A DNA stretch of 64,000 nucleotides from Euprymna scolopes (lineage: Eukaryota): the NCBI GenBank assembly GCA_053919585.1, contig CM132797.1, one strand, 5' to 3'. The position numbers and the translations under genes are program-made. Of the stretch, positions 1,241 to 63,995 are shown piece by piece. The notes under the pieces were generated by a model. It did not search any database, had not been told where the DNA came from, and saw nothing but the letters and a program-made list of their open reading frames with translations. The first letter of the stretch is position 1. Every line of letters begins with the position of its first letter.

Positions 1241-1303
1241 GCAATTAAGCTACACAGAATATTCCACGTTTCATTCTCGTGTGAATTCGTCAGGCTTAAT
1301 TGC
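1241..1303 (-). ncRNA. Type I hammerhead ribozyme, intact core
   Basis: Minus strand: GCAAUUAAGC-CUGACGA-AUUC(acacga)GAAU-GAAA-CGUGGAAUAUUCUGUG-UA/GCUUAAUUGC; perfect 10-bp stem I, GUA cleavage triplet. Confidence 0.85.
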
Positions 1304-1410
1304 CATATATATTTTTACAACTCACTACCTAGCTCTACCTATTTATGGAGCTCTGTTGAAGTAAATACTGAAAATTTACGCATAAAATTATATTTTCGTA
1401 TATTAATTTT
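1241..1410 (-). repeat. Hammerhead-bearing dispersed repeat (second copy at 49264-49425)
   Basis: Clear similarity over about 165 bp; both copies abut (TA)n. Confidence 0.85.
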
Positions 1411-1447
1411 TGTGCTTAAATAAAGTCGTCGTATATATATATATATA

Positions 1448-1489
<42 letters not shown>

Positions 1490-1867
1490 TAAATAGATAG
1501 ATAGATAGATGGCTGACATGTAGCAACGTGGGGATGGCATTTCTTTTTCCCCAAACACCAGGTTTATCATGTACAATATCAACCTTTTGTTGGTAACATA
1601 AAATGGAAACAACATGTGACGAGTTGGTGAGGACAGGAAATTTTTATGAACACATAAAATCATAAAATTGCCATTCCATTAACGAAACGGCTGTAATGAA
1701 GAAATCCAGAATGAAAGAAACAAAAGTTACAAAAAAGAAAAATGTAAGTTTTTGAATTTCAACAAAGTTTTGCACTATATATATATATATATAATATTTA
1801 AAATATAATTATCCACTCTATATAAATAAAAATAATAAAAATAATTTTAAAAAAAATAATATATATG

Positions 1868-2004
1868 TCGTTCCCCATTAAAAGGGGGTACCAGAGTGGA
1901 CAATGGGAAAATTATTCCCAACAAGCATTTAGGTAAAAATACACTTTCGTATAAATACTTGAATTCATTCAAGAAAGTATCGCTAACAAAAACAAATAAA
2001 AACA

Positions 2005-2005
<1 letters not shown>
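1868..2005 (+). repeat. Short dispersed repeat between microsatellites (second copy at 47030-47158)
   Basis: Shared GGGGGTACC...GGGAAAATT.TTCCCAAC..GCATTTAGGTAAAAAT.CACTTTCGTA...GAATTCATTCAA. Confidence 0.8.
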
Positions 2006-2079
<74 letters not shown>

Positions 2080-2219
2080 ATGAAAACAAAAGGATGTAGT
2101 GTTACCCTCATTAGTTATGCATAACATGTCCAAAACTAAATGAAATCATAGTTTCAAGTAATAGCAATAATAATGTCAACCATACTAACTACAAGAGCAG
2201 TAACATAGACAGATCTTCC

Positions 2220-3174
2220 ACTAGAAAAAGGGTGAGGAGAAAGAATAATATTTAGTTAATCCCCAGTTCAGCTCAAATGTAAAAACTAATATTCCCAAGG
2301 AATTCTTCAATATTGTTGAAAATTCTTTTAGGTACCCGCATAGGTATACCAGTTTGTTTAACAAAATTTCCATCAGGATATCATACGCTACAAAGCTTAA
2401 TTTAGCCCAGACACTCATAACCTCTAATAACAAGAAAATTAAAGATGCCGAAGCAATTCCTTTTCCCTTGGTCAAGAAAACCAAATGTAATTGTCAAAAA
2501 CAAAAAAGAAGAATTCCCCCTCAATAATAACTGTATCCATGAAATGTGATTTATTCATGTACTGTAACTGAGATACCATCTAAATCCCTCCAAAGAAACA
2601 CCACTAAATTTTCCAACAGCCAATTTTTGGTCAAACAATGAACCTGCACATCCCCCTCCTCTAATAAGCTTGATTATTAGCATTACTAATAATATAAATA
2701 AAATCCCTAATAGTAACTTTTGAAAACCAGCCCAATGATAACATCACCACCCACACACCCACTTCCTATCCTAACCTTAATAACAGTCTAATATTAAATG
2801 CAAACAACAGTATCCACAATGAACCCAGAATATACACATACATCGTATCCACTTCTACTTTAATAAAGCAGAGAATCTCTAACTACACATCATCTTTTAG
2901 CAATAAAAACACAAATAGTAACCAGGGAACTTCTCTGGCTACTTTAATTAAAAAACTTAAATCGAAGAATATTCGCTTCTCAATTAATTGGAGTATTATA
3001 TGTAAATCGCAATCTTACACCCCTGGATCTAAATATTGTAACCTCTGCCTTTCTGAGGCAGTTAGGATAATAACGTCTCCTCAATCCAAAAATGTAATCA
3101 ATACAAAGAGTGAGCAAATTTTCCAATAAAAACATAGGGCAAAATGCAAGTATTGCAATTTTGAAATTACATAG
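2220..3174 (+). pseudogene. Penelope-like element, Naiad-type: RT thumb/linker and C-terminal GIY-YIG endonuclease remnant
   Basis: Manual translation, missed by the ORF track: NPQFSSNVKTNIPKEFFNIVENSFRYPHRYTSLFNKISIRISY; CNC..PLNNNC..VIYSCTV; YIVSTSTLIKQRISNYTSSF...INWSII...YTPGSKYCNLCLSEA...INTKSEQIFQ*KHR. Confidence 0.8.
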
Positions 3175-4402
3175 TGCCTCTGTTAAAATTGAAAATTCAA
3201 TTACATTAGCATTTTTTTTTACTACTGTACATTCTTATTATTGTAGTTTTTAAATACATTCTGTCAGATTTTATCATTTTGTCTTACCTAGTTTATTTTT
3301 TTTATCTTGGGAATTATAGAAATAACCAATACAAATATCGGCTGTTATTATATTATTTTATTTTTTTTACATATTAAGATAAATAGTACTCCTAAATTAT
3401 ACATANNNNNNNNNNNNNNNNNNNNNNNNNNNNNNNNNNNNNNNNNNNNNNNNNNNNNNNNNNNNNNNNNNNNNNNNNNNNNNNNNNNNNNNNNNNNNNN
3501 NNNNNNNNNNNNNNNNNNNNNNNNNNNNNNNNNNNNNNNNNNNNNNNNNNNNNNNNNNNNNNNNNNNNNNNNNNNNNNNNNNNNNNNNNNNNNNNNNNNN
3601 NNNNNNNNNNNNNNNNNNNNNNNNNNNNNNNNNNNNNNNNNNNNNNNNNNNNNNNNNNNNNNNNNNNNNNNNNNNNNNNNNNNNNNNNNNNNNNNNNNNN
3701 NNNNNNNNNNNNNNNNNNNNNNNNNNNNNNNNNNNNNNNNNNNNNNNNNNNNNNNNNNNNNNNNNNNNNNNNNNNNNNNNNNNNNNNNNNNNNNNNNNNN
3801 NNNNNNAGCAGTTTTACCATTTGTTATAATATATATACGTGTATATAATTATTTTTANNNNNNNNNNNNNNNNNNNNNNNNNNNNNNNNNNNNNNNNNNN
3901 NNNNNNNNNNNNNNNNNNNNNNNNNNNNNNNNNNNNNNNNNNNNNNNNNNNNNNNNNNNNNNNNNNNNNNNNNNNNNNNNNNNNNNNNNNNNNNNNNNNN
4001 NTGGTTTGTGCGTTGTGTATATATGTATATATGTTTATATATGTATATATATATGTAGATATATGTATATATGTGTGTATGGATGTGTGTATATATGTAT
4101 GTGTGTTTGCATGTTTATGGGTGTACTTAAGTATGTATAAATGTGGGTAAGTACGTGTATGTATGTTATGTGTATATGTATAAGTATGTATATGTGTACG
4201 AGTGTGTATATCTGTATGTATATATGTGTATATATGTATATATGTGTATGTATGTGTATATTTAATTTTATCAATATCGCTGTATGATTGACATAATCAT
4301 TTGCGTCACTATCCTTATTGCTGCTATTATAAACATTATTATTTTCGCTATCTTTATTAGTCTTTTATACTTATTACTAAATTTTGTTACTATAATTACT
4401 AA

Positions 4403-4438
<36 letters not shown>

Positions 4439-5072
4439 TTGTTACCTTTATCAACATCATGACGTTTTGAAAGCCTTAAAAACTATGATTCTGCAACACT
4501 TAAAAATTATAATCATCAATCCTACACTTTTGCTTTTAAAAATGACATTGGATTTCTTTATAGAAAGATCTGTTTCATTCTGTCTAGACAATTTCCGGTC
4601 ACAGTAATTACGAGCTTTCGCGGTTTTCCCCCACCCGCTTGAAATCACTTTTTCTTTTTAAGCCGAGGATGAAGGTTCTCATTTTGGATTTCTCTCTTCT
4701 TACTATTAGATCCCATTTGACTAGGGACAGACTTCTTTTTGGACTACTGCACTGCCCGAAAAAAAAACAACTTTCCAATCGGATTTTTTAAAACTCTCCA
4801 ATCGGATTATATGCATTGTTACGCTGGAATTATCTTGGAATACATTCTATCCAAAGAACTATTTTGCATTTTGAATCAACTCTAGAGGAGTTTCATTCAA
4901 ACTGAAATTTTATGCGCGGTTTGTTTTTATATTAGTTTTTACATATCCAATATTTTTTCATTCGTTCATTTTTTTTTGGGCAATTTATAACTACAATAAA
5001 TTGCGGTTTCACTTAATGCCTTAACAAGGAAATTCTAGTATTGCTACAAATATAATTTGCTGATTTCTTTAT

Positions 5073-5131
5073 GTCCTCTGATGAGAAAAATAATAAGCAT
5101 AACATTCTTTGAAACTCCGCGGAATAAGGAC
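5073..5131 (+). ncRNA. Type I hammerhead ribozyme, near-intact
   Basis: GUCCU-CUGAUGA-GAAAAAU...AUUCUUU-GAAA-CUCCGCGGAA-UA/AGGAC; 5-bp stem I, palindromic stem III, AUA triplet with a C.A mismatch. Confidence 0.7.
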
Positions 5132-5213
5132 TTTGTAAATTGTTTTTTGGAGTATTCAGTCGAACAATAAATTTTGATTGTAAAGTTCAACTTACAGTTT
5201 TAATTTTCTTTCT

Positions 5214-5270
<57 letters not shown>

Positions 5271-5639: not shown

Positions 5640-6085
5640 GAATCACAAGAGACGCTTATGGACCTTATTCTTTAAAAGATCAAGGTCAAAAAATATTAGG
5701 GGATAAAGAGTTAGCAGGGACAGAAAGAGTTCCACAAGATTGTAGTTCTTGAAAATAAGCTACTGGAATAGGAAGCGTTATTGCAATGAGCTATAAAAAC
5801 AGCGAATTTTTTTATTTTTTTACTTGGGAGTCACTACTTATCAAGGCTCTAAGACCACTCGAGGATAAGTGTTAATGAATGTTAGGTAGTAGTGCAGTAA
5901 TCGTTAATGGTGCTATTTGGATAGAATCTGATTATTTATGGGGATGGCTTAACATCAATTTGTTTACATTGGATTTGAAGGCTAGAATATTGTATTCAAC
6001 TCGGAATCACGCCAGCAGAACAGTGTTTCACAGGTTGGAAGTTCTTGAAAAGAAAATTTGTTCATGGAATGTGCGTTTAGATTTA
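5640..6085 (-). mobile_element. Two adjacent LINE 3'-end remnants (CR1/L2 group)
   Basis: Minus strand gives SSSLFSRTTILWNSF (about 5725-5780); 5815-6085 resembles the reverse complement of 1-296 including the A-rich tail. Confidence 0.65.
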
Positions 6086-6144
6086 GGCACATATAGAGAG
6101 TGGGGAAAAATCGTATATAGTGGATGTAACGATAGAAAATAACG

Positions 6145-6196
<52 letters not shown>

Positions 6197-6200
6197 TCAT

Positions 6201-6244
6201 CCGCATACAGTACTGTTTCGTTGTATCACAACTCATCAGTGCGG
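6201..6244 (-). ncRNA. Minimal type I hammerhead ribozyme, canonical
   Basis: CCGCA-CUGAUGA-GUUG(ugaua)CAAC-GAAA-CAGUACUG-UA/UGCGG; all core nucleotides present, palindromic stem III. Confidence 0.92.
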
Positions 6245-6267
6245 CTAGACAAACACCTTTCTCCAAC

Positions 6268-6326
6268 CGTGGATTGAACCTACAGCCGTCGCATTGACAG
6301 TCGGCAGCTCTCACCATCGGCTACGA
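6268..6326 (-). promoter_or_regulatory. tRNA-derived (Asp-like) internal Pol III promoter
   Basis: A box TAGCCGATGGT, anticodon-like CT-GTC-AA, B box GGTTCAATCC; no complete cloverleaf. Confidence 0.7.
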
Positions 6327-6524
6327 ATCAGTGCCTTAAATATTTCTCCTAGAGTGTGTATTAAATCCACACCCTCCCGTCGCAAAATGCTCGAACCATC
6401 AGCTTGTTTACAAACAAATTAATAGTGGGCTTCGCTTAATCGCTTTAAATATGCGTCGGGTGAAAATATATTTACAAAGTGCTCAACCCAAAGAGGGGAG
6501 GGGGCTTTAATTGTCATCCACACC

Positions 6525-6609
6525 GTCGCGACACTGGACATGCTAATGTTTCGGACACATGGTTGGTAAAAAACACTAGTCCTCGTGTCAGGCGACTTAA
6601 AAAGTGTTT
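6525..6609 (-). ncRNA. Variant type I hammerhead with expanded core and pseudoknot
   Basis: GUCGC-CUGACACGA-GGAC(loop containing AGUGUUU)GUCC-GAAA-CAUUAG...CCAGUG-UC/GCGAC; upstream AAACACU (6603-6609) complements loop II. Confidence 0.75.
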
Positions 6610-7659
6610 GTCTCCCACAGAATAAAACCAGTTCTAAACCCTTGATTTGAGATCTGTAATTTTTTTTTTTTGAGTATTCAGTCGAACAATAAATTTAATT
6701 GTAAATTTTAACTTAGTTTTAATTTTCTTTNNNNNNNNNNNNNNNNNNNNNNNNNNNNNNNNNNNNNNNNNNNNNNNNNNNNNNNNNNNNNNNNNNNNNN
6801 NNNNNNNNNNNNNNNNNNNNNNNNNNNNNNNNNNNNNNNNNNNNNNNNNNNNNNNNNNNNNNNNNNNNNNNNCTCTCTCTATCTGTATCGCTCCATCTCT
6901 CTCTCTCTCTATATGCACACAAGCATACACGCACACACACACACGCACAACACGCACAACACATACACATATATATATATATATACACGCATGTATATAC
7001 GTAATCTGTCTAGTAAGTGATACGTACACAGTTTAAGCGAGTTTGCCGTACCAGTACGAAATTAGTGACCATTTGAAAAGAACAATAGATGTATTATTTG
7101 GTAAAAACCTTTTACAATAAACAGACAATGCCAAATGTACTATTTAGCGTTAAATGACCCAACGATGGTTGATATGCCGTAAAAGTCAAGAACATGGTGA
7201 ACGGGTGAAACTTGCGTCCATTTAATCCAATTCCCTCGATAATCATCTGTTTGCGAATAAGCGGCATCTGTCAAATATTGGTCTTGGCCTTTTTTCCGCT
7301 ATAAGGAAAACCATTGCGATTTCCTTGCTTTTGGAACTTTCCCGTTCGGTGATTTCTTTTTCATTTCATATAACAATATTTGCGAGTTTATCTTTTCTGG
7401 AACCGATTTCATGGAAGCAATTATATTGACAATTGCAACGAAGACGAAATTACAACATATAAAAACCTTTTTATGCCTGAAAATATCTCTGAACTGAAAA
7501 CCCACAGAAAAAAAGCAGGTATACCTCATGTTTAAAAGTCTTTTCTTTCACCATTACTCCTCTTTTTCAGTATCATTGTTATACGTGAATCGTTTCATAG
7601 CCTTAGAAACATACGAATCAAACACACATATATAAATAGATAAATACATGACTAAAAAA

Positions 7660-7931
7660 AGCTCCCCTCTTTGGGTTGAGCACTGTCGTAAATGTATTTT
7701 ACCCGTTTCTTATTTAACGATTAAGTGAAGCTCGATGTCTGTTTGTTTGTAAACAAAGTAGTAGCTCGAGAACTAGTAAGGATGGCTTATTTAATAAGCA
7801 TTTAGTGAATCAGTTGTGAGCACTGATCTATAGCCCTGTGGTTAGAACTGCCGATTGTCAACGCGTGGTTGTAGGTTCGATCCGCGACTTGCCGTTGTGA
7901 TACAACGAAACAGTACAGTATGTGGATGACT
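7660..7931 (+). mobile_element. Second copy of the tRNA-head/hammerhead element; 5' half of the ribozyme deleted
   Basis: Inverted homolog of 6195-6500; tRNA-like 7831-7886, then GTTGTGATACAAC-GAAACAGTACAGTA without CTGATGA. Confidence 0.8.
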
Positions 7932-7979
7932 ATATAAAGGAACACACACCGACTCACATATATACACACACATATATAT

Positions 7980-8043
<64 letters not shown>

Positions 8044-8049
8044 ATGTTG

Positions 8050-8582
8050 ATACTTCTCAAAGGGAAACTTTTGTTTGTGTGTGTGTGTTTGTATGTCGGC
8101 CAAAAACCTTAGACACACGCGACAAACATTGACAAAATCAATATCGTTTGAAAGGTCAGTCTCTCGCGTGACAAATATCCAAAGATTGGCTAAAATACAT
8201 TAATTCAGTGCTGATCAACTGAGTCTTTCTTTTTTGCAAGTAGGGGTCAGTTTTTGAGTCGACGTTTTACAAAGAGGTCATACGCTTTGCAATGATTAAC
8301 CTTATCTTGAACGGCCGTGACGTCGTAAGTCGTCGCGGTGGGCGCGGCGATTAAATTGTTGTTTTTTTTTGTTTTTTTTTACTTCTTTTCCTCTTAATGC
8401 TACAAGTTCGAGCTTGGCTACTGCGGCTATTTGGGGATGGGGGCGCTTGCACGGGTACTGGATGCTATTCTCATTTTTATTTTAGGGGGTTGGTTAAATT
8501 TTTTTGTTTCTCTCCTCTCTGTTCTACAATACCCTTACCATAACACATCTCCGCACCCGCGCAACACCAAGTACCCCGCTAG
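8050..8582 (+). mobile_element. Non-autonomous Helitron-like element
   Basis: GT microsatellite near the 5' end, GC-rich 3' segment ending CTAG|T; homolog on the minus strand at about 53890-54190. Confidence 0.6.
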
Positions 8583-9690: not shown

Positions 9691-9710
9691 CCAGTAAATG
9701 TGCGCATCGA

Positions 9711-18434: not shown

Positions 18435-18811
18435 TATTTACAATAATAATTATTAAATACCAACAGACACTAGTGTTTCATCCTTTTGGGAATCATCAGT
18501 GCAGGCTGTCACGATTGATGCTAGTCGATAGATTCAAACAACAGCAGTCATGCCTAGCCTCATTAACAAGGACCTTAACCATTCGGCTACCGTCAACCGA
18601 GAGAGATACAATTGAAATTTTACATTTATTCTTATTAAATGCTTTCAACGTCAGTCAGAGTGATCTAATCATTATATGACGATCTGCGCGTATTAGCTAA
18701 GTTGACCGACTTTATTACAACTGGAAGTCCTCAACGATAAGAAACAAGTTTCTTAAAGGGGATGACATTATTATTTACTATAATAATTATTAAATACCTA
18801 CAGACACTAGT

Positions 18812-18815
<4 letters not shown>
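18432..18815 (-). mobile_element. Retrozyme-like unit: 337-bp period, tRNA-like head and minimal hammerhead
   Basis: Terminal direct repeat (18432-18478 vs 18769-18815); A box TAGCCGAATGGTTAAGG on minus at about 18575-18591; flanked by (TA)n on both sides. Confidence 0.75.
18460..18505 (-). ncRNA. Minimal type I hammerhead ribozyme
   Basis: CCUGCA-CUGAUGA-UUCC(caaaa)GGAU-GAAA-CACUAGUG-UC/UGUUGG. Confidence 0.82.
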
Positions 18816-20125: not shown

Positions 20126-20149
20126 TGAATTTTAAAAAATTTAATATAA

Positions 20150-21328: not shown

Positions 21329-21339
21329 CATTAACAATA

Positions 21340-21633
21340 ATTTGTCTCACTCTTTATCTGTTCCTAAGCCTAAATGTTGATTCCGTGAGCAATGCTTCTG
21401 TCTTAGAACTGCACGCCCGAGGAACTCTCTTCGGTTTTCCGGATTTCCAACTGACTACAATATGACCGTCTTCAAGTCCAACGTAAACAAGTTCTTGATG
21501 AGCCGATCCCTTTAAGTAATACATTTTACCAAATTTACACTTCTAACGATTACTATGACGCACACTCATTAACCCTTATCCTCGAGTCGTCTCCGGGCCT
21601 TCAAAGTGGTGACTCGTTTATATAAAAAAAAAA
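21340..21633 (+). mobile_element. LINE family A 3' end
   Basis: Homologous to 1-296, with poly(A). Confidence 0.85.
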
Positions 21634-22810: not shown

Positions 22811-22811
<1 letters not shown>

Positions 22812-24424: not shown

Positions 24425-24464
<40 letters not shown>

Positions 24465-25494: not shown

Positions 25495-26960
25495 TTACAT
25501 AGAAACCAAATTAAGTCCCAAAAGATTTTCTTTTTGCTTGCAAAGAGAAGGTCTCAAAGACTTTGTAAAAATAGTTTCTAGAATTTTTAGATGAAAGATC
25601 GTAAACATGCCAGCACTTAAATTCGTGGTACACACATGGTTATTTATGAGATGCTCGCAAATTGAAGAACAATACGTATTACTCAGAACATCCGAAGGTG
25701 AACAATTTGAATACCGAAACTTTGATGGTAGGTGTTGCTTCAAACGAAAATCCAATCTTTGAGATGTTTGCCCAACATAGTGCGCGCTGCAACTACATTT
25801 GAATAAATAGTAGAATTATTATAGTGAGGGCAGAAAAATCTTTGCAAATGGACCACAACATAAATCTGGTTGAAAAAAAAAAACACGCGTAGAGCCGATG
25901 GAAAATAACACCGTTGTACAGACAAAGAAATTAGCTTAGCAAATCGATCTCTGATGTTATCTAGCCAAGGTAGACGAAGGTAAACAGGACATCTATTAGC
26001 TACAATTTCTTTAGATTTGTACAAATTGGAAACTTTCTTATTAATAGTAGTTTCAACAATATCTAAGGGGTAGCCATTGTTACAAAGGGTCTTCGTAATG
26101 AATTTAAGCTCATCATCAAGATTAACTTTAGAACAAATCATCAACGCCCTATATGCTAAAGTTTTAATTAAATTATATTTTCGTTTTATAGGACAAAAAT
26201 AGTCCCAACGCGTATAGAGACCGGTAAATGTTGATTTACGAAAAGCACAAGTAAAAAAAAACATGATGATGTCTTGGACACAAGAACATCTAAAAACGGA
26301 AGAGTAGAATTTGTTTCTTTATCTATCGTAAACTTAAGGGCTGGATGAACGTTATAGAGGGATACTAAAAAAGGCATCCGCTTTCGTCTCATTGTTAAAT
26401 AAACAAAAAGAGTCATCAATGTAACGAAAGTAAATGTTTGGTTTATGCAAACCAGATAATAGACTGTTCATGAAAACCCACAAAGATATTAGCCAACGCT
26501 GGTCCCAATGGGGAATCCATGGCCACACCATCTGTCTGTTTGTACATAATATCACTGAAACTGAATTCAACCGACATAATGGCAAATTTCATCAATTCTA
26601 CTGGAATTGAGGGAGTTGGAAGTTGACTCCGATATAAGGCGTCATCACAAATATTAATAGTCTCTAACAATGGAATGCAAGTAAAAAGACTAGAAATATC
26701 AAAAGAACACATAAATTTGTCACAATGAATAAAGTTTTGCATAACGTTAGCAAGGTAAAAGAGTCTTTAATGCAAAATAAATTATAAAGTTCCAAAACGG
26801 GTTCTAAAATACTTGTCAACCATTTAGCTAACTTATGTTTAGAGGACCCCATCATTGATAATATGGGTCCCCCACTTTTATCGGCCTTAGGCAAACTATA
26901 CAAACGGGGCGAATAGAACCGGTGGGTCGAATTAAATTAGAAATGGAATTTCAGTGACTA
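25495..26960 (-). pseudogene. Penelope-like retroelement (Penelope/Poseidon type): RT and GIY-YIG, frameshifted
   Basis: SFDISSLFT, QTDGVAMDSPLGPALANIF, YFRYIDDSF, LPFLDVLV, FRKSTFTGLY, NNGYP, RLKQH...ICEHL...ILE...PSLCKQ across several ORFs. Confidence 0.92.
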
Positions 26961-45151: not shown

Positions 45152-45205
45152 AGTGGTGAAAATACTAGACTAGAGTGCTCAATGTGTAGCCAGAGCAGTA
45201 TATAA

Positions 45206-45421
45206 GAAATTTATTACTGTGAGTCCAGAATGAGTTTACATATTGTTTCAGCTAGAGGAAAATCCTCAAAAAGAAGAAAAGATATCCGACTAGCATCGTC
45301 AGAATTCATAGATGGCCCATCTATGAATTCTGACGATGCTAGTCGGATATTTGCTCTTCTTTTTGAGGATTTTCCTCTAGCTGAAACAATATGTGAACTC
45401 ATTCTGGACTCACAGTAATAA

Positions 45422-45426
<5 letters not shown>
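45206..45426. ncRNA. 221-bp near-perfect palindrome made of two head-to-head hammerheads
   Basis: 110-bp arms, 1-nt centre (45316), 4 mismatches; each arm reads AUGAAUU-CUGACGA-UGCUAG...CUAGCU-GAAA-CAAUAUG-U(A/G)/AACUCAU. Confidence 0.8.
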
Positions 45427-45474
<48 letters not shown>

Positions 45475-46925: not shown

Positions 46926-46959
46926 TGATGAGTCCTAGACGACGAAACACGTGTCAGTG
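46926..46959 (+). ncRNA. 5'-truncated minimal hammerhead within (TA)n
   Basis: UGAUGA-GUC(cuagac)GAC-GAAA-CACGUG-UC/AGUG; C3 and the 5' strand of stem I replaced by TA repeat. Confidence 0.7.
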
Positions 46960-46976
46960 GATAATTATATTTGAAA

Positions 46977-49205: not shown

Positions 49206-49265
<60 letters not shown>

Positions 49266-49269
49266 TAAT

Positions 49270-49322
49270 TAAGCTTCACAGAATATTCCTCGTTTCATTT
49301 TCGTGAGAATTCGTCAGGCTTA
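49270..49322 (-). ncRNA. Hammerhead copy with a mutated cleavage triplet
   Basis: UAAGC-CUGACGA-AUUC..AAAU-GAAA-...GUG-AA/GCUUA; GUA changed to GAA relative to 1241-1303. Confidence 0.7.
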
Positions 49323-49425
49323 CGTTATTTTCAATAATTTACTACCTAGCTCTACCAATGTATTGAGCACTGTTGAAGTAAATACTGAAAATTTACGCAT
49401 GAAATTATATCTTCATATATTAATT

Positions 49426-49836
49426 TAGGGGACGATTCCAATATTTTTCTCGATTCCGATACAATTACCGATTTCGTGCTTAATTCCTGATTTTGATTCT
49501 TTATAAATCTCTAAATACTTAGTTGTATTATTTATCTGATTACCGTAAAACACACACATGTTAAATGTGCAGCTATTTTCCTAAACGTAAAAATATACTT
49601 GTGGGGGAAGATCTATCGATGTTAACTTCACTGGTGGTTTTCAAATCAATAAATATTTATTATTTTATCATTATTACCAGCAATGAAAGATTTTGCTTTA
49701 AACAAAACAAAATAAAAACAGCGATTGAAAGAATCGTTTTGACATCGGGAAATCAGTACAATTTTTTTCGATTCCGATACCCTCAAATATTCCGATTTTT
49801 CTGATTCTCGATTCTGATTCCAATGCATCGTCCCTA
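49426..49836. mobile_element. MITE-like element, possibly hAT-derived
   Basis: TIR-like TAGGG(G)ACGAT...ATCGTCCCTA with subterminal (C)GATTC repeats; TSD not clear. Confidence 0.5.
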
Positions 49837-54848: not shown

Positions 54849-56489
54849 TTAGTAATTTTATATTTTTAATCATAAGATTTTCGTCTCCAACCGATGGTAG
54901 ATTATATTTATAAATTGAACAACAAAGCAATAATCGATCTATTTCGGTGTTGGCACGAATTCTTCATTTTCCATTGATTGCCAAGTCATAAAATAACTTC
55001 TTGCTTTGCTGAACAATCCACTCAGGCCGGCTTATTTGGAGCTAATTAACCTTCTTTGAATTTGTGGCCTGAAAACATCAGTTCTGAGCCAGAAGTAGCC
55101 GATGATTGAATATAGATAAATATCGGTAACATTAAAAAGACGAAATCAGTTTTGTATCTAAGTTGACAACTTCATAATCAAATAATACTGTCTACGCCGA
55201 CTACAGAAAAGCATTAAAATCCACGTCTATATAAATTCGTACGTCTGTGACATTGTCTGGGAACCCACAGACGTTGGTTCTAGTTTTAGTCGCAAAGAAG
55301 ATAAAGACAAAGGATAGGAAATGATATAAGGATGATGTGTGTGTGTTTATAAATTTGAGACGCGCCTGATAAAATATCTTTTTTCATTTTTATGCCTCTT
55401 CTTATCGATATCTTTAGTTTAAATAAATAATATTTAAAATAATTTAACACTTTTAATGGAGTAAAATACCAGCAGGTAATAGTGCAACAAAATACCCTGT
55501 GTGCATTTTCAGTCAGAAAGGAGAGACCAAGATAAAAAATAGTAAATAACTGCGACCTGCTTTTTGGTTTGTACAACGACATTCATTTATTCGTTCTTTA
55601 CAGCCGTGAGTCACCAACATGATCTAGAACGTTCTCAACGTTGTCTCATTTCTTCCCGAGATTTTTGCTATTCCCTTTTTATAGTCCTTTCCCCCGACTA
55701 CTGACGTCACCTCTTATGCATTTACATACGCAAATCCGCACTATGTTACATATGTGCACATTTATATGCGGACATGTACAGGGTTTGTAATATTGTCGTC
55801 TGCATAATTTATGACTCGCACTTTTACAAAATGCGTATCATTATATATGGACTCTGATGACCGCGGTTTTTGTGATCCAACAACATTTTTTAAATCAACA
55901 AAGTTTTATTTACATTACAGTGAAAATATGACATGCGAGAGAGTTCGGGTCAGTATGAAGTGGTGTATGGCGGCGACGGTAAAATTGTGCAGCCTTTTTC
56001 TTTCTTCTGTCTTTGTTTCGACCTGATTTAAATTTACATCATCCCACATTCCTTGATCGAAATCTGATTGTTCGCTTATTTTGATTCAATTTGAAATACA
56101 TTTAGCCATTCAAATCCAGTTAAAATATTTTCTTTCATGTTTCATGATCTCTAATGTAGGGTTGACGTTATCGGTCACCAATCCCATTTACATCTGGTTT
56201 TGCACGGATCCATACTTGCGTGTGTGCAATACATTCGATATGTTCTTTTGGATAGAATGACTAAATACTGTTCAAATATTTTGACATTCTTCTTTTATAG
56301 TGTTATGCTTTGTATGCTTAGCAATTTCGATCCAGAGTTAAATATTTCCCTCATTGTTTTATGATCTCGACACTTCGATCGGAATGCAATCTGATTTATA
56401 TCCGGTTTTGCCCGGATCCGATATTTTCCGGCGTTTTCCGTCCCCTATGCCACAGATTTCCCCTAAACCCCCTAAATGCCCTAAAATCG

Positions 56490-57022
56490 AGTAATGCTGC
56501 CACATCTGGGTAGGGGCTTTTCACAGTACCCATCCTGCCTGATCAAGGTTCAAAACCGGTTTTAAAGTCAAGAAAGCGAGTTCTTTTTATCGTTATTACA
56601 ACCTTAATATCATAGAATAAGAGACGCTACGCGTCTATCTCTGCTCTATCGTCATTTTGTTGAAAATGGTTGCCCTTGCAAAAAATTCACAAAAAACACT
56701 CGTTTTTATAAAACCAGCTTCCCATACACTCTCTGTGTACTAAACGCGAAATTCCATGAACAAATTGTTTATTTTTTAACTATACGACTGTTAACCTTTG
56801 TACTGCTTAACTGCTTTCCAACTGATTACAACATGGTTATTTTCAGGTCCAATGTAAACAAATCTTTGCTTAATCGTCCTCTTAAATATTCGAATTCTAC
56901 CTAATTTCATCCACTACCGAATATTACGGTATTATTACACCGAATAGATGGCAGTAATTAAATTTTATTCTTACGTTGCATTCAGACCTTGATAAGCGGT
57001 AATTCTCTTGTAATAAAAAAAA
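56490..57022 (+). mobile_element. Old LINE family A 3' portion
   Basis: CCHIW-like motif and CFPTDYNMVIFRSNVNK; tail with poly(A). Confidence 0.7.
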
Positions 57023-57953
57023 GATTAAGCCAGTCTGATAAGTAAGAAAGCACACTTCAAGTTAGGTCATCATCATAGCATTTTTCTCTTGAGGTTTAGC
57101 GTACGGCAGTCTCCGCGACATACCTCGGATCCTCATCGGAGCATGCCCGCTTAGGGGGAGAGTCTGTGGGGATTGGTGCAATATTCTGCACATTGGCACT
57201 GCAGAGACAAAAATGTCTGTACATAGCCCCTACTTGTTCAGGTTATTCCGATTTTTTATCATTAAATCGAAAACATTTTTAATATATTTTTACTTTTTTT
57301 TTCTAAACGAGTTTTCTGCTTGTGTCGTAATAAAAATTCACAAATGCACTTGTGATGTGAGACTGTATCTTAAGTTTGGCCAGCATCGCCTGTTTCTTTC
57401 TTTCATCGGATTTCTTTCGATAATCGATACCTTTCGAAGACATTCCGATATAAAATCTATCTAAGAACACTACCAAGTACATAAAATACCTTTGTATGAA
57501 ATAGCCTAAAAGTCGCCCCTTGTAGTGGAAAATGTTGTTAAAAAATGCGGAATTTTTTTGTTGGATTATTTTCTCTTTTACATTTTCCGATCTCCGAAAC
57601 ATTCTCTTTATATTTTTATCAAAATTGGATAAGTTGGATCCATATGTTTTTGCATAACGAGCGCTTCTGACTAGAACATCTCTGTCATCCTCTAGCAGAC
57701 AATGTCATTTAGTCTTGAAGGTCGACTGAACGCATGGAATAAATAACTACAACACAAAGTAAAGTAGAACAGATATATTGAAAGCAAGAAATTACATACC
57801 ATTGTCACATAGAGTCCATTGGTATAGTAATAGGGAGACCGTCCCTGGAGAAGGTGTCAGCTGGGTGGTCGTCGACTCTCGGTCTCGTGTCTCGTTCAGT
57901 CTCTGATTGGGTCTCTTCCGTCTTTACGGTACCAACGATATTTATAAAAGTGC

Positions 57954-58441
57954 GAAAAGCATTTCATCCAAGACATGAAAATTGTTAAACAAAATATTTT
58001 TACTATAGGCTTCAAAAATAAATGTACAAGATTCAATTTGAAATTTATTTATCTTCAAAGTGCACTTTTATAAATTTTACAAAGTAAGGTATAAAAATGT
58101 AATTTAAATTAAATCCAAAAATTACTTTGGATTTATTTTATGTAATGTACATTCTGTTGCACTTTTTAAAAAAATCATTGAAAATTTTATATATTTATCA
58201 TTAATTGCTAGATGAAAGATAATGTTTTTAAATTGCAACAAAATGTACATTACATAAAATAAATCCAAGGTAACTTTTTGATTCAATTTAAATTAAATTG
58301 TTATACCTTACTTTGTAAAATTTATAAAAGTGCACTTTGAAGATAAATAAATTTCAAATTTAATCTTGTACCTTTACTTTTAAAGCCTATGGTAAAAACA
58401 TTTTGTTTAACAATTTTCATGCCTTGGATGAAATGCTTTTC
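57954..58441. mobile_element. Foldback/MITE with AT-rich inverted arms of about 210 bp
   Basis: GAAAAGCATTTCATCCAAG...CTTGGATGAAATGCTTTTC; arms roughly 85-90% complementary; no hammerhead core seen. Confidence 0.8.
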
Positions 58442-58484
58442 TAACTTGTATCTTATCTTTTTAAGATTATATTTTAAAACTCTC

Positions 58485-60426: not shown

Positions 60427-61721
60427 CGAGGGGTGTGCAATAAGTAATGCCCCTGACCCACTTCCCATAGGAATAGAGCAACGAAACTTGGCATAGTTAT
60501 TAGTCTTTCTCTTCATAGGAATCACACAGAGTTATGTACTTCTCCCATCGTTTGATGCAGCTCTAGAGACCGTTTTTGTAGAACACCCCAGGTTGGTCCT
60601 TCAACCACGACGTGACTTCAGAAATCAAGGCTGCATCATCTGGGAAACAAACGCTTTCATTTCAAAAACAACTTAATGGCTGGGAAGAGGTGAAAGTCAG
60701 AGGGTGCAAGGTCAGGAGAGTAGGGAGGATGGGGAAGGATTTCATAATCACACGCCCGTGCTTCTGATCTGGCGACATGCGAGTTGTGGACCGGAGCGTT
60801 GTCTTGCAGGAGGAGGGCATCTTTACTGATCTTGCTCCACCTCTTGATTTTGATAGCTTCCCTTAATTTCCTTAAAAGTGAAGCATAATTGGCTCCTGTA
60901 ATTGTGGTACCCTTTGCCAGGAAATCTGTCATCACTACTCCGTCCTGGTCCCAGAAGACTGTGAGCATGGCCTTGCCAGCGGAGGGCTGAACTCTTGCCT
61001 TCGTTGGAGGTAGTGAGTGCAAGTCCTTCCACTGCATTGACTGGGCTTTGGTCTCTGGATCATAGTGATGGATCCAGGTTTCATCCTGTGTAATCAGTAT
61101 TTGTAAAAACTTTGACTCATCTTCTTGGCACATCTCCAAATTCATCCTCGAGCACTCGACGCGTTCTCGCTTCTGGAATGGTGTAAGCAACCTGGGAATC
61201 CATCTGGCAGCCACCTTTTGCATATGCAAATGGTCATGAATTATAGTTTTCACAGACCCCGTACTAATCTTGACATCTTGGTCTATTTGGCGAATAGTAA
61301 TGCGCTGATCTTCCAAAATGGCAGCCTCAACTTGACGAACAGATTCCTCATCAATGACAGAAGGGAGCGACCAGGTTTAGGTGCTGTTTCCACAGACTTC
61401 CGGCCATGTTTGAATTCACAATGCCAGCGTTTTACAAGGTCATATGATGGTGCATTATCACCATAAGTTTCTTTCATTTCATCAAAAGTCTCCTGTGGTG
61501 TGCGTCCTTTCAAATAGAAAAACCGGATCACTGCTCGACATTCAACAGGCTCCATTTCACACCTGACTCAGTTCAAGCACCTGTAAAACAGAAACCACAA
61601 TTACTTTAAAGTTGTAATTTGCCACATAACCCGTAGAGATTTAAATAATTGCACATTCAAATTTTCAGCTTGATCAGACAACTGAAGTGGGTCAGGGGCA
61701 TTACTTATTGCACGCCCCTCG
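60427..61721 (-). mobile_element. Full-length mariner (DD34D) transposon, 1295 bp, transposase disrupted
   Basis: 38-bp TIRs CGAGGGG(T/C)GTGCAATAAGTAATGCCCCTGACCCACTTC, TA TSD on both sides; WIPRLL, TQDETW, QDNAPVH..(34)..YSPDLAPSD; split over ORFs 61283-61555 and 60657-61316. Confidence 0.97.
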
Positions 61722-61756
61722 TATTGTGAATGTAAGATATATATACTGGCAGGACT

Positions 61757-61812
<56 letters not shown>

Positions 61813-63246
61813 CTAGCATGGGTACCCGGCGTTGACTGCGTTGGCATGAAGTTCTGCTTTGAACACACCTGCTATACAAATCATTTTCATCAGGGACAAC
61901 GTGGATACCCCCACAACAATTCCAAAAATAAAAGAACGGATAAAAACATCGCCCCCAAAAAGAAGTATGCGATACCATTTCCACCAGATATCTCGGCAGA
62001 AGGGATACAAAGAGAAGAAAATATTCTCCGGATATTGAGCACTGGAAAGACCCCACCAATCGCAAAAAAAAAATAGCCAAGTAGGCAGAACCCCTAAAAA
62101 AATTAAGATCTACCAAAAATGAATTCCCAAAACAATTAAATGAAATTTTTCATCATTGTAATTCCCTCACTCTATGTAACTTATATTTTGGGGTTCATTT
62201 TGTTTATGAATTTGTTAGTTGAAAGTACAGAGTGGTATCATAAAAATTAATTAAATTTATCGTTATTTTATGTTTTAAATGTAATTTCTGCCCCCTTAAA
62301 AAAACAAACAAACAAATTGTATTTGTCATGTTTTGCCCCCCCCCTTCGATTGCCAAACTTGAACAGATGATAGAGGTGACATGTCTCGTTGAACGCTTGG
62401 TGGCCAAAATGTGGGTGCTCATTTTACGTTAAATTAATATGGAAAACTGATCCACCACTCCAAAATGTTAATTTTTTTTTCTTTTCCAAATTTATTTCGT
62501 ATTATTTATAAAGGCTATTTAAACTTTTAGGCCAAAAAAAGTAGATCCTTATTTTTTTAGGTGGGTCACAGCGTAAAAAAAATTACCGATTTCTGTATAG
62601 CCGTTAACATAGAATAATAAAAACAAACACATGAAATCTTTTCTTCAGTTTTTCGTAAGTGTTTTTTTAATATTAAAAAAAAACAATAAAAGCCAAACAT
62701 TTTTCTATCTACTCAGAATTATTTTTTCAAGCTAGAAATTCATTGAGATTACCAAATTATTTTATTAATTGATAGTTTTTATTTTTTGTTTATGCTCCGA
62801 AGGTGCAAATAACTCTAAAAAAAATATTTCTAAAAAATCGATGTTTGAATAATAATTCCAAATAAATTTAATTAAATATGTTATCAATATAATTATTGTT
62901 TCAAATTTATTAAATAACGATTTTAAATAGAACACTTATAACGAATCTCTCGCTAGAAACATTAACTAAGATACCGCTATTTAACAAAATCAGTTTTTCT
63001 TAATGTAATATGCAAATGAGATGATCTCTTTATTGTATCTAGTTTGCAAGAATCATGCTATATATAGAAATAGATGAGAGAGTAAAGTAAGGCACCTTTT
63101 GTATATATTAATCAAATTGTGAACAAACAAACAAACAGACACGAATACGAAATCTGAGGTTATTATTTTCCAGAGATTAAGTAATCAATGAAGTTTAACG
63201 AGGTTAATACAAGAGTGCTACAATTCCGAAGTAGAGCAGTGTATAC

Positions 63247-63554
63247 TCTTTATGTGTTTTTACATAAGCAAAAATATGTTGCTATAATCATGAGCATATT
63301 TTGGTTAGCTAGCTACTAGTAACTAGAGACTTCTTCGGTCGATACAGCTTATACGAAAGCAAAGTTAACAATGAAAAGAAGACCTGATGTTTTCATTGCA
63401 ACCGTTGCTTTCGTATAGGGTGAATGCTTATTCGCTGGTGCTGAAGAATTTATACGCTCATTAGCCGGAGAGATCTCTAGTTACTAGTTGTTAGCTGGCC
63501 GAAACATGCTCATGACTGTGTAGCAACATATTACAGCTTATGTAAAAAATAAAG

Positions 63555-63555
<1 letters not shown>
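63247..63555. repeat. Imperfect palindrome of about 310 bp with a decayed hammerhead-like right arm
   Basis: TTTTTACATAAGC..AATATGTTGCTA..TCATGAGCAT..CTAGTAACTAGAGA and its complement; GGCC-GAAA-CAUG...UGUG-UA at 63497-63522. Confidence 0.7.
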
Positions 63556-63592
<37 letters not shown>

Positions 63593-63685
63593 GGCAGTAA
63601 AGTTTAGTTTCCTAGAAGTACATTCAATGAAACATATTGTGTCTACCAAAAAGTGCTCAATGAGTAAACAAAGCAGGTATATTAA

Positions 63686-63892
63686 ATTTATTTATACAAA
63701 CATTGATGCCTACATATGTGCATACATGATTCTGTAATCACACGTTATTGAGGAGATTACGTTTTCAGGCCAAGAATTAGTAACTAGCAGTTTTCGAGGG
63801 TAATTCTTGGCCTGAAGACTTAATCTCCCCAATAACGTGTGATTACAGAAACATGTATGCACATATGTAGCCATCAATGTTTGTATAAATAA

Positions 63893-63894
<2 letters not shown>
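63686..63894. ncRNA. 209-bp palindrome; right arm carries an intact-core type I hammerhead (63808-63873, +)
   Basis: UGGC-CUGAAGA-CUUAAUC...GAUUACA-GAAA-CAUGU(augcac)AUAUG-UA/GCCA; the left-arm copy has CUGAAAA and GAAU. Confidence 0.82.
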
Positions 63895-63933
<39 letters not shown>

Positions 63934-63954
63934 AAATAATTATTCATTTATACT

Positions 63955-63995
63955 TACAGACACTAGTGTTTCATGCTTACTACATTATCAGTGTA
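63955..63995 (-). ncRNA. Minimal hammerhead (family of 18460), G8 changed to A
   Basis: UACA-CUGAUAA-UGUAGUAAGCAU-GAAA-CACUAGUG-UC/UGUA. Confidence 0.65.

What the first reader, a model, noticed from the sequence alone, without database searches (positions are those of the whole stretch)
1241..63995. Window-wide set of hammerhead-ribozyme mini-elements at (TA)n/(TAA)n microsatellites
Seen: CUGANGA/GAAA cores with closing stems at 1241, 5073, 6201, 6525 (expanded core), 18460, 45230/45323 and 63808, plus decayed copies at 7895, 18800, 24705, 32848, 46926, 49270, about 63707 and 63955, plus a separate hammerhead-like family (22811-33650). Stem sequences differ between families while pairing and core are kept, which amounts to natural covariation. 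Established: type I hammerheads occur in Penelope pLTRs and in metazoan non-LTR retrozymes that produce small circular RNAs. Inference: these are several non-autonomous families mobilised by PLE reverse transcriptases, two remnants of which lie in this window. The density and architectural variety are unusual.
Basis: partly seen in the sequence, partly recalled or inferred. Interest (0 to 1): 0.9.

Follow-up and report, generated by a model that had tools for sequence, protein, structure and literature searches.

The report
Hammerhead-ribozyme mini-retroelements in TA repeats
This 64-kb stretch of a large mollusc (probably squid or cuttlefish) genome holds about a dozen copies, mostly damaged, of several short non-coding mobile elements that carry a self-cutting hammerhead RNA motif and insert into TA repeats; this kind of element is already known, though I found no published description for this animal group.

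Summary
A strict type I hammerhead descriptor finds 3 intact motifs (1239-1305 -, 5073-5131 +, 6201-6244 -) against 0.10 expected in shuffles. A relaxed one finds 7 against 0.89. A covariance model built from genomic copies recovers the named sites at 18460, 63955, 7895, 32848 and 46926. Most motifs lie on the minus strand. The "expanded core" at 6525 is a 2-nt insertion in a decayed copy. The sites at 24705 and 22811-33650 are not supported. Rfam reports no hit at its gathering thresholds.

The motifs belong to at least seven families of 200-830 nt. Each has hundreds to thousands of dispersed copies in this 5.9-Gb genome. The ribozyme sits near the 3' end, and an AU-rich tail abuts (TA)n or (TAA)n. 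Insertions are partial tandems or head-to-head inverted pairs. Stems covary between families.

Two Penelope-like remnants do lie in the window. None of the three Penelope lineages I sampled carries a hammerhead or shares sequence with the elements, so mobilisation by Penelope enzymes rests on insertion architecture alone. PolyA RNA-seq shows transcription but no cleavage ends and no circles.

This is a new member of a known kind (Schistosoma Sm-alpha, animal retrozymes). This scan has already found it on other DNA of the same genome.

The parts
1217..1424 (-). F2 element, 208 nt, no tRNA-like part. It has an intact hammerhead at 1239-1305 with CUGACGA, GAAAC and GUA at the cleavage site, and a stem I of 12 contiguous pairs by the descriptor (up to 17 pairs by eye in family copies). 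(TA)n lies on both sides.
   Evidence: at least 2577 candidate copies, 82-91% identity; fold z = -6.6
49208..49426 (-). Second F2 copy, decayed. In its hammerhead at 49264-49323, U16.1 is changed to A and stem I is partly lost. Its 3' end abuts (TA)n at 49209-49262.
   Evidence: (85% identity to 1179-1409)
4389..5216 (+). F4 element, about 830 nt and non-coding. The hammerhead is at 5073-5131 with stem I GUCCU/AGGAC and the palindromic stem III loop UCCGCGGA. This copy has an A.C mismatch in stem II that other copies lack. An 85-nt tail follows, then (TA)n at 5216-5267.
6195..6500 (-). F1 element, 305-nt unit. A region with A-box-like and B-box-like motifs lies directly 5' of an intact hammerhead at 6200-6245. 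The predicted cleavage site is between 6206 and 6205. The tail GGAUGACAA abuts (TA)n at 6146-6193.
   Evidence: at least 4591 candidates, 94-96% identity; 71.7 bits
6501..6654 (-). F1b partial copy lying upstream of F1. Its hammerhead at 6525-6596 has a 2-nt insertion in the CUGANGA box (CUGACACGA), so it is decayed. It shares the GGAUGACAA tail with F1.
   Evidence: (L007 copy has CUGACGA)
6655..6730 (+). F4-type 3' tail fragment. It runs up to the assembly gap at 6731 and cannot be interpreted further.
7662..7980 (+). Old F1-like copy, 68% identical to 6146-6500. The hammerhead remnant at 7891-7926 lacks the CUGAUGA box. (TA)n/(CA)n lies downstream.
   Evidence: 26 bits, E = 1.8e-5
18440..18815 (-). 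F3 element, about 335-nt unit. A region with A/B-box-like motifs precedes the hammerhead at 18460-18505, which is followed by an AU-rich tail and then (TA)n. A 5'-truncated upstream piece at 18769-18815 starts inside the ribozyme, directly after (TA)n.
   Evidence: at least 4937 candidates; 62.8 bits
32845..32887 (+). Decayed F1/F3-type hammerhead: GAGAC replaces GAAAC and stem III is deleted. No TA tract lies nearby.
   Evidence: (18.2 bits, E = 0.005)
45199..45433 (.). F5 head-to-head inverted pair, arms 95% alike, flanked by (TA)n on both sides. Hammerhead-like motifs at 45230-45309(-) and 45323-45402(+) have U.U at 10.1/11.1 and an A.C mismatch in stem I. The right arm has G at position 17.
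   Evidence: (at least 792 candidates, 96-98% identity, many with an inverted partner)
46926..46962 (+). F7 fragment, a hammerhead truncated at its 5' end. It begins at UGAUGAG directly after (TA)n and has the palindrome ACACGUGU as stem III. (TA)n resumes 27 nt downstream.
   Evidence: Rfam Hammerhead_1, 23.7 bits, below the gathering score of 34; 90% match in L074
63678..63902 (.). F6 head-to-head inverted pair. The right arm at 63807-63873(+) has CUGAAGA, GAAAC and GUA with stem I UGGC/GCCA. The left arm at 63691-63773(-) is decayed (CUGAAAA, GAAUC). (TA)n lies at 63897-63926.
   Evidence: intact relative in L004; at least 1282 candidates, 94-97% identity
63883..63997 (-). F3-like copy that runs off the window end. 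Its hammerhead at 63950-63997 is decayed (CUGAUAA).
   Evidence: (30.4 bits)
25498..26947 (-). Remnant of Penelope-like element lineage B (reverse transcriptase plus GIY-YIG endonuclease). It is 5'-truncated and frameshifted, and it ends near the microsatellite at 25209-25291.
   Evidence: at least 12603 candidates; E = 1.7e-108
2225..2581 (+). Short remnant resembling a third, divergent Penelope-like lineage (C).
   Evidence: E = 2.7e-20; lineage C is 26% identical to lineage A over 378 aa

Best explanation
The window holds insertions of at least seven families of short non-coding retroelements (F1-F7, 200-830 nt). Each carries a type I hammerhead ribozyme near its 3' end, followed by a short AU-rich tail. 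Stem III is short and its loop is palindromic, as in hammerheads associated with Penelope-like elements (PLEs).

Shown here:
- The motifs are real and far more frequent than chance.
- They belong to dispersed high-copy families.
- Their stems covary between families while the catalytic boxes stay fixed.
- The elements sit in (TA)n/(TAA)n.
- An insertion is typically a full unit preceded by a 5'-truncated copy of its own 3' part, or a head-to-head inverted pair.
- In two families (F1, F3), a region with A-box-like and B-box-like motifs lies directly 5' of the ribozyme.

Inferred mechanism. A transcript spanning more than one unit is cut by the ribozymes to unit length, probably acting as dimers through the palindromic stem III. 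This RNA, as a multimer or after ligation into a circle, is reverse-transcribed at a nick in a TA repeat by a PLE reverse transcriptase/GIY-YIG endonuclease. Copying runs for more than one lap, which would produce the 'partial copy plus full copy' form. Most copies in this window are dead.
For: - Descriptor counts against shuffles: 3 vs 0.10 and 7 vs 0.89, with 0/300 shuffles reaching the observed count in each case. The reversed-sequence control gives 0 strict and 2 relaxed hits.
- A covariance model built from genomic copies finds five window sites at E <= 0.005.
- Candidate copies per family, all lower bounds: F1 4591, F2 2577, F3 4937, F4 601-2018, F5 792, F6 1282. They lie on many chromosomes and have shared ends.
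- Covariation within F1+F3: 89.7% of cells paired, 4 pairs with changes on both sides, score 0.306 vs 0.174 shuffled (0/500) and at most 0.114 when partners are slid.
- Covariation across 46 instances of 8 or more families: 3-5 pair types per stem position, and 247/322 paired at positions the descriptor does not demand, vs 165 +/- 7 when partners are shuffled.
- At least 29 of 40 scored F1 loci and 16 of 40 F3 loci have a 5'-truncated copy directly upstream.
- F5 and F6 often have an inverted partner.
- TA-tract association: 11/16 sites, P = 2e-10.
- Resident PLEs of this genome also sit in (TA)n and form tandem and inverted arrays. The lineage A copies examined have an open frame of about 806 aa with RVT_1 and GIY-YIG above the Pfam cut-offs.
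- Published precedents: PLE pseudo-LTRs carry hammerheads and PLEs target (TA)n (PMC8557442). Animal retrozymes are described in PMC7229834, and a 2026 preprint links them to PLEs (10.64898/2026.07.22.740005). Sm-alpha is a tRNA-derived element with a hammerhead (PMC2770079).
- The ribozyme module is transcribed in three polyA RNA-seq runs.
Against: - No link to a particular PLE. PLE lineages A, B and C and the other GIY-YIG loci sampled carry no canonical hammerhead within reach, and they share no sequence with F1-F7.
- Rfam gives no hammerhead at its gathering score.
- RNA-seq shows no pile-up of molecule ends at the predicted cleavage site 6205/6206. Most reads cross the site, both strands are covered, and the go-back joints are explained by tandem DNA. 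These were polyA libraries, which would miss small RNAs.
- Several families have a non-standard 10.1/11.1 pair: U.U in F3 and F5, C.A in F6.
- Minimum-free-energy folds do not single out the hammerhead fold, except through F2's long stem I.
- The 'tRNA-like' heads are not recognised by ARAGORN or by Rfam's tRNA model.
- The F1 unit contains a T4 run, which would hinder Pol III from transcribing a whole unit (read from the copies shown).
Confidence: 0.68

Rival explanations
1. These are ordinary SINEs copied by a LINE reverse transcriptase. The hammerhead is a passenger motif with no role in mobilisation.
For: LINE-type reverse transcriptase remnants are in the window: 51990-53100(-) matches RVT_1 and has a YADD motif. 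Three further 3'-end copies are present. F1 and F3 have A/B-box-like heads as SINEs do. No PLE partner was identified.
Against: No family ends in poly(A) or in a tail shared with the window's LINE. Partial-tandem and inverted insertion forms and the strict (TA)n target are typical of PLEs rather than LINE-driven SINEs (PMC8557442). The ribozyme is the one part shared, with covariation, by families whose bodies are otherwise unrelated.
Confidence: 0.12
2. The motifs have the form of a hammerhead but no longer cut. They are relics, kept only because young copies have had no time to decay, and the elements spread without ribozyme activity.
For: There are no cleavage ends in RNA-seq. Several families have non-standard 10.1/11.1 pairs, and no loop-loop tertiary contacts are evident. 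Rfam scores fall below threshold. PLE clades without hammerheads proliferate well (PMC8557442).
Against: Compensatory changes between families keep all three helices, while 11 core positions stay invariant across at least 8 families of different ages. This is hard to explain without selection on source copies. Similar minimal PLE hammerheads are reported to cleave as dimers (Lunse et al. 2017, as cited in PMC7761336; I did not read that paper).
Confidence: 0.15
3. These are chance matches to a short degenerate motif in AT-rich, repeat-rich DNA.
For: The core is short. Two relaxed hits appear even in the reversed sequence.
Against: 0/300 shuffles reach the observed counts. The same motifs recur with conserved register in thousands of genomic copies.
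Confidence: 0.02

Closest known systems
Schistosoma Sm-alpha / Sj-alpha SINE-like retroposons with a hammerhead ribozyme (Ferbeyre et al. 1998 and Laha et al. 2000, as cited in PMC2770079)
   Same: Short, non-coding, high-copy element that joins a tRNA-related region to a type I hammerhead. Tens of thousands of ribozyme copies per genome.
   Different: Sm-alpha is recognisably tRNA-Gln derived: tRNAscan calls its copies (PMC2770079). The heads here are not called tRNA by ARAGORN or Rfam. Here there are many families, some without any such head (F2, F4), a strict (TA)n/(TAA)n target and partial-tandem or inverted insertion forms. The host is a mollusc, not a flatworm.
Metazoan non-LTR retrozymes (Cervera and de la Pena 2020, PMC7229834; Li, Clavereau and Pollet 2026 preprint, 10.64898/2026.07.22.740005)
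   Same: Non-coding units of 170-400 nt with type I hammerheads, arranged in tandem. Proposed processing to unit length, circularisation and mobilisation by PLE enzymes.
   Different: Circular RNA is not shown here. Most insertions are one unit plus a partial unit rather than long arrays. The upstream piece often starts inside the ribozyme, leaving only one complete hammerhead. Cephalopods are not mentioned in PMC7229834.
Minimal hammerheads of Penelope-like element pseudo-LTRs (Cervera and de la Pena 2014; Lunse, Weinberg and Breaker 2017; both as summarised in PMC7761336)
   Same: Type I topology, very short helix III with a palindromic loop that suggests dimeric action, tandem or inverted context, microsatellite targets.
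   Different: The PLE lineages sampled in this genome (A, B, C) carry no such motif and share no sequence with the families. Here the ribozyme sits on non-autonomous elements only, as far as I sampled.
Ceph-SINEs of squids and cuttlefish (Akasaki et al. 2010, as discussed in PMC5786205)
   Same: tRNA-headed short retroposons of decapodiform cephalopods.
   Different: Ceph-SINEs are defined by a Ceph-domain that is partly derived from RTE LINEs. PMC5786205 does not mention Penelope; I did not search it for 'hammerhead'. I did not compare sequences, because none were available to the tools.

Membership tests
Hammerhead ribozyme, type I | Conserved core boxes CUGANGA ... GAAA ... U-H (H not G) in the right order | tested here: met
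   Intact at 1239-1305(-), 5073-5131(+), 6201-6244(-), 18460-18505(-) and 63807-63873(+). Mutated in the decayed copies.
Hammerhead ribozyme, type I | Three helices around the core, with helix I open (5' and 3' ends in helix I) | tested here: met
   Helix I has 4-17 bp, helix II 3-7 bp, and helix III 1-3 bp with a palindromic loop.
Hammerhead ribozyme, type I | Covariation that keeps the helices | tested here: met
   score 0.306 vs 0.174 shuffled, 0/500; 247/322 paired vs 165 +/- 7. The sequences are related to each other, so these are not probabilities.
Hammerhead ribozyme, type I | Rfam covariance model (RF00163 and clan CL00010) at gathering score | tested here: not met
   0 hits; best scores are 23.7 bits (gathering score 34) at 46919-46962, 21.9 (48.5) at 6210-6255 and 18.4 (52) at 18447-18512.
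Hammerhead ribozyme, type I | Site-specific self-cleavage | tested here: inconclusive
   no pile-up of molecule ends at 6205/6206 in three polyA RNA-seq runs. These libraries are unsuited to small RNAs, and the reads come from many copies on both strands.
Metazoan non-LTR retrozyme | Non-coding unit of a few hundred nt bounded by hammerheads in direct repeat | tested here: inconclusive
   at least 29 of 40 F1 loci have an upstream partial copy, and about 20 of those include a whole ribozyme. In the window itself, no element has two intact hammerheads.
Metazoan non-LTR retrozyme | Expression as small circular RNA | tested here: inconclusive
   go-back joints (6496 to 6196) appear mainly in contigs of a run that may be DNA, plus 3 reads in one RNA run. 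Tandem DNA explains them.
PLE-dependent non-autonomous element | Sequence shared with the pseudo-LTR or 3' end of a resident PLE | tested here: not met
   no match of F1-F7 to 23 PLE loci of lineages A, B and C, apart from neighbouring independent insertions in L074; no canonical hammerhead in those loci. Only a small sample of at least 15,397 GIY-YIG candidates was examined.
PLE-dependent non-autonomous element | PLE-type insertion forms (partial tandem, inverted 5'-truncated copy) and a microsatellite target | tested here: met
   The same forms and the same (TA)n target are seen for PLE lineages A and B.
tRNA-derived SINE | Head recognisable as tRNA-derived | tested here: not met
   ARAGORN finds 0 in the window and 0 in 20 loci at default settings, and only inconsistent calls at an 80% threshold. 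Rfam's tRNA model has no hit at E <= 10. Only A-box-like (TAGCCGAATGG) and B-box-like (GGTTCGAATCT, GGTTCAATCC) motifs are seen by eye in F1 and F3.
tRNA-derived SINE | 3' tail shared with a partner LINE, or poly(A) | tested here: not met
   tails are family-specific and AU-rich, and they end in (TA)n/(TAA)n. They show no similarity to the window's LINE remnant.

The most novel reading that the evidence does not exclude
The hammerhead-plus-tail block may be an exchangeable 3' cassette. The same block (CCGCA-CUGAUGA...GUA-UGUGGAUGAC) is joined to at least three unrelated bodies (loose ends). None of the PLE lineages sampled has it.

Every insertion also extends about 12 nt or more past the cleavage site, so the reverse-transcription template cannot be the cleaved linear monomer. 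The form 'one lap plus a partial lap, ending in an AU-rich tail inside a TA repeat' would then be the footprint of rolling-circle reverse transcription of a ribozyme-made RNA circle, primed by TA-repeat DNA. On this reading the ribozyme cassette, rather than any homology to the enzyme's own RNA, is what makes an RNA a substrate.
Probability: 0.2. Interest if true: 0.65.

Novelty: new member of a known kind. Interest (0 to 1): 0.4.

Why it matters
If the elements are active, this genome offers young, very abundant and architecturally diverse hammerhead retroelements. F1, F4, F5 and F6 copies are 94-98% alike. The genome also has an apparently intact, very young Penelope-like element.

That pairing is a good natural system for two open questions. 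One is what hammerheads do for Penelope-type retrotransposition. The other is how the partial-tandem and inverted insertion forms and the TA-repeat preference arise.

There is also a practical point. Rfam thresholds miss all of these motifs, so standard annotation probably undercounts them heavily. The giant squid genome paper, for example, reports 235 hammerheads (PMC6962438).

Tried and rejected
- Rfam at gathering score gave nothing. In E-value mode it gave mostly microRNA-family hits on (TA)n/(CA)n, which are low-complexity artefacts.
- ARAGORN did not support the 'tRNA head'.
- Minimum-free-energy folding gave weak z-scores and does not discriminate.
- I looked for the partner element through the GIY-YIG family, through the window's own reverse transcriptase remnant, and through BLAST of all families against 23 PLE loci. 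None had a shared sequence or a canonical hammerhead. A hammerhead-like stretch in the 3' region of PLE lineage A (CUUGAAGAA-GCCCG...CGGGC-GAAAC) fails the core and stem I tests, so I dropped it.
- The reverse transcriptase at 51990-53100 is LINE-type and the ORF at 60657-61316 is a mariner-type transposase. Neither is a PLE.
- Read laying on 6196-6654 showed transcription but no support for cleavage or circles.
- The genome-wide candidate count from the covariance model (4.25 million) is flagged by the tool as rough, so I did not use it.
Their full extent is unknown.

Full report
**Setting.** The window is G000:C15:118854001-118918000 of a 5.9-Gb assembly in 925 contigs, with at least 46 chromosome-sized pieces. 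It has about 32% G+C and holds 41 TA/TAA tracts. RNA runs labelled as mollusc samples hold parts of the elements. The genome size and chromosome number suggest a squid or cuttlefish; that is my inference, not a tool result. Assembly gaps were left alone. No hammerhead motif spans a gap. The only feature that runs up to one is a tail fragment at 6655-6730.

**Checking the observation.** Rfam finds nothing at gathering score. In E-value mode it gives three weak hammerhead hits, at 46919-46962, 6210-6255 and 18447-18512, among many microRNA-model hits on TA/CA repeats that are low-complexity artefacts.

Reading the named sites shows that most motifs are on the minus strand. I wrote a type I descriptor requiring stem I of at least 4 bp, CUGANGA, stem II of at least 3 bp, GAAA, and A15.1-U16.1 with a non-G at position 17.
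- The strict form finds three intact motifs: 1239-1305(-), 5073-5131(+) and 6201-6244(-).
- Three hundred dinucleotide-preserving shuffles give 0.10 +/- 0.31, and none reaches 3.
- A relaxed form gives 7 against 0.89, again 0/300.
- The reversed, uncomplemented window gives 0 strict and 2 relaxed hits.

A covariance model built from 18 genomic copies of two families finds these window sites:

| Site | Bits | Note |
|---|---|---|
| 6200-6245(-) | 71.7 | |
| 18460-18505(-) | 62.8 | |
| 63953-63997(-) | 30.4 | G8 changed to A |
| 7891-7926(+) | 26.0 | CUGAUGA box deleted |
| 32845-32887(+) | 18.2 | E = 0.005 |
| 46926-46955(+) | 13.1 | 5'-truncated |

The 'expanded core' at 6525 is a 2-nt insertion: a genomic relative in L007 has the canonical CUGACGA. 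The sites at 24705 and 22811-33650 do not form a hammerhead.

**What the motifs belong to.** Searches of the window's own genome show that each motif is part of a dispersed repeat family. All candidate counts below are lower bounds.
- F1: 305 nt, at least 4591 candidates, 94-96% identity.
- F2: 208 nt, at least 2577 candidates, 82-91%.
- F3: about 335 nt, at least 4937 candidates.
- F4: about 830 nt, non-coding, 601-2018 candidates, variable 5' ends and a common 3' end.
- F5: at least 792 candidates, 96-98%.
- F6: at least 1282 candidates, 94-97%.
- F1b, F7 and F8 also exist, seen in loci.

In every family the ribozyme lies near the 3' end. A short AU-rich tail follows and runs into (TA)n or (TAA)n. 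Eleven of 16 window sites have such a tract within 100 nt downstream, against a 6.3% background (P = 2e-10).

**Insertion architecture.** At least 29 of 40 scored F1 loci and 16 of 40 F3 loci carry a 5'-truncated copy of the unit's 3' part directly upstream of the full unit. The truncation points vary. Nine of the 31 F1 pieces begin at unit positions 264-269, inside the ribozyme's CUGAUGAG box and directly after (TA)n. The window's F7 fragment at 46926 begins the same way, which suggests junction formation by microhomology with the TA repeat. Such upstream pieces lack a complete ribozyme. F5 and F6 occur in the window as head-to-head inverted pairs (45199-45433 and 63678-63902), and they often do so elsewhere too.

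**Covariation.** Within F1+F3, 89.7% of cells pair and four pairs change on both sides. The covariation score is 0.306, against 0.174 +/- 0.019 for shuffled partners (0/500) and at most 0.114 when partners are slid.

Across 46 distinct instances from at least eight families, each stem position uses 3-5 standard pair types, while the core boxes are invariant. At positions the descriptor does not demand, 247 of 322 cells pair, against 165 +/- 7 for shuffled partners.

The following features are read directly from the sequences:
- Helix III has 1-3 bp and a palindromic loop (CAGUACUG, CACUAGUG, UCCGCGGA, GGAAUAUUCU, ACACGUGU), as in PLE-associated minimal hammerheads that are reported to act as dimers (PMC7761336).
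- F3 and F5 have U.U at 10.1/11.1, and F6 has C.A.
- Thermodynamic folding does not single out the fold, except for F2's long stem I.

**The 'tRNA head'.** F1 and F3 have A-box-like (TAGCCGAATGG) and B-box-like (GGTTCAATCC, GGTTCGAATCT) motifs directly 5' of the ribozyme. ARAGORN and Rfam's tRNA model do not recognise a tRNA there. F2 and F4 have no such region. tRNA ancestry and Pol III transcription therefore remain hypotheses. A T4 run inside the F1 unit argues against Pol III making a whole unit.

**Penelope-like elements (PLEs).** The genome has at least 15,397 GIY-YIG candidates.
[quoted passage not shown] More than 100 GIY-YIG matches have the identical score. It forms tandem and inverted arrays and has (TA)n on both sides.
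- Lineage B: older, at least 12,603 candidates.
- Lineage C: divergent, 26% identical to A over 378 aa.

The window holds a frameshifted, 5'-truncated lineage B copy at 25498-26947(-) and a short lineage-C-like piece at 2225-2581(+). The reverse transcriptase at 51990-53100 is LINE-type, and the ORF at 60657-61316 is a mariner-type transposase.

None of the 23 PLE loci examined has a canonical hammerhead or shares sequence with F1-F7, apart from independent neighbouring insertions. PLE mobilisation is thus supported only by the shared target and insertion forms. These features are described for PLEs in PMC8557442, and the retrozyme-PLE link is proposed in 10.64898/2026.07.22.740005.

**RNA.** I laid three polyA RNA-seq runs on 6196-6654. 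The ribozyme block at 6196-6259 is covered about 200-430-fold, and the F1 body 10-20-fold. The loose ends show that the same block is joined to other bodies, which fits loci L008, L010 and L041. Both strands are covered, at roughly 1:2. No pile-up of ends appears at the predicted cleavage site, and most reads cross it. Go-back joints (6496 to 6196) are mostly in contigs of a run that may be DNA. This shows transcription only. It neither supports nor excludes cleavage or circles, because polyA libraries exclude small RNAs.

**Mechanism.** The elements are non-autonomous retroelements with a conserved hammerhead.
- Every insertion continues past the cleavage site through the 3' strand of stem I and the tail. 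The template therefore cannot be the cleaved linear monomer; a multimer or a religated circle fits.
- One full unit plus a partial second unit is what reverse transcription running for more than one lap would give.
- I consider mobilisation by a PLE enzyme at a nicked TA repeat the most likely route (about two in three). LINE-driven SINEs (0.12) or relic, non-cutting motifs (0.15) are possible, and chance is excluded.

**Comparison and novelty.** The design matches Schistosoma Sm-alpha (PMC2770079) and animal retrozymes (PMC7229834). I found no paper describing it in cephalopods. The giant squid genome paper lists only 235 Rfam hammerheads (PMC6962438). The same scan has already reported such elements on other pieces of this genome; those notes agree with my reading, which I had formed before consulting them. 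This is a new member of a known kind, of moderate interest.

Noticed in passing
L059:1918-4335 (-), L060, L061 (other chromosomes of the same genome): A very young Penelope-like element has an uninterrupted open frame of about 806 aa (RVT_1 plus C-terminal GIY-YIG). More than 100 copies have identical GIY-YIG scores. It is arranged in tandem and inverted arrays inside (TA)n, and no canonical hammerhead was found in its ends.
   Followed up: partly
window 51990-53100 (-); also 19566-20140, 40593-41010, 43907-44334: A LINE-type reverse transcriptase remnant (RVT_1, YADD motif) and three further copies of the same element's 3' end. This is an unrelated retrotransposon family.
   Followed up: partly
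window 60657-61316 (-): Remnant of a mariner/Tc1-type transposase (Pfam Transposase_1, E = 3.8e-21).
   Followed up: no
window 1-327, 5720-6109, 21032-21650, 30088-30662, 42589-42871, 56480-57048: An unclassified repeat of about 300 nt is present in at least seven copies in both orientations (62-78% identity), partly in tandem at 21032-21650.
   Followed up: no
window 9710-10396 and 14651-15264: Two tandem arrays with periods of about 26 bp and about 60 bp (90-96% identity between repeats). Long ORFs across them are artefacts of the repeats.
   Followed up: no
window 57944-58451 and 63242-63560: Two large near-palindromes (87% and 67% arm identity) of unknown nature. They may be further inverted retroelement insertions.
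   Followed up: no
window 35151-35272 (-): Weak 5S rRNA-like match (30 bits, gathering score 38). It is possibly a 5S-derived repeat, as reported in large numbers for the giant squid genome.
   Followed up: no
window 6196-6259: The F1-type ribozyme block is covered far more deeply than the F1 body, in RNA runs and in a run that may be DNA. Reads join it to at least three different upstream sequences, so the same ribozyme-plus-tail block serves several families.
   Followed up: partly
L072:2440-2600 (-), L006:1290-1400, window near 25300-25500: The 3' untranslated region of Penelope-like lineage B carries a conserved stretch, GGCUCUGUUGAGCGAGGAUCGAAACCGGGUUAGCUGGCC. It resembles both a B box and a hammerhead with A6 changed to U. 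It fails the hammerhead test and remains unexplained.
   Followed up: partly
window 25209-25291, 7962-8053 and other TA/CA tracts: Rfam microRNA models (mir-3149, mir-1277 and others) score up to 58 bits on plain (CA)n(TA)n(TG)n microsatellites. These are low-complexity artefacts, not microRNA genes.
   Followed up: yes
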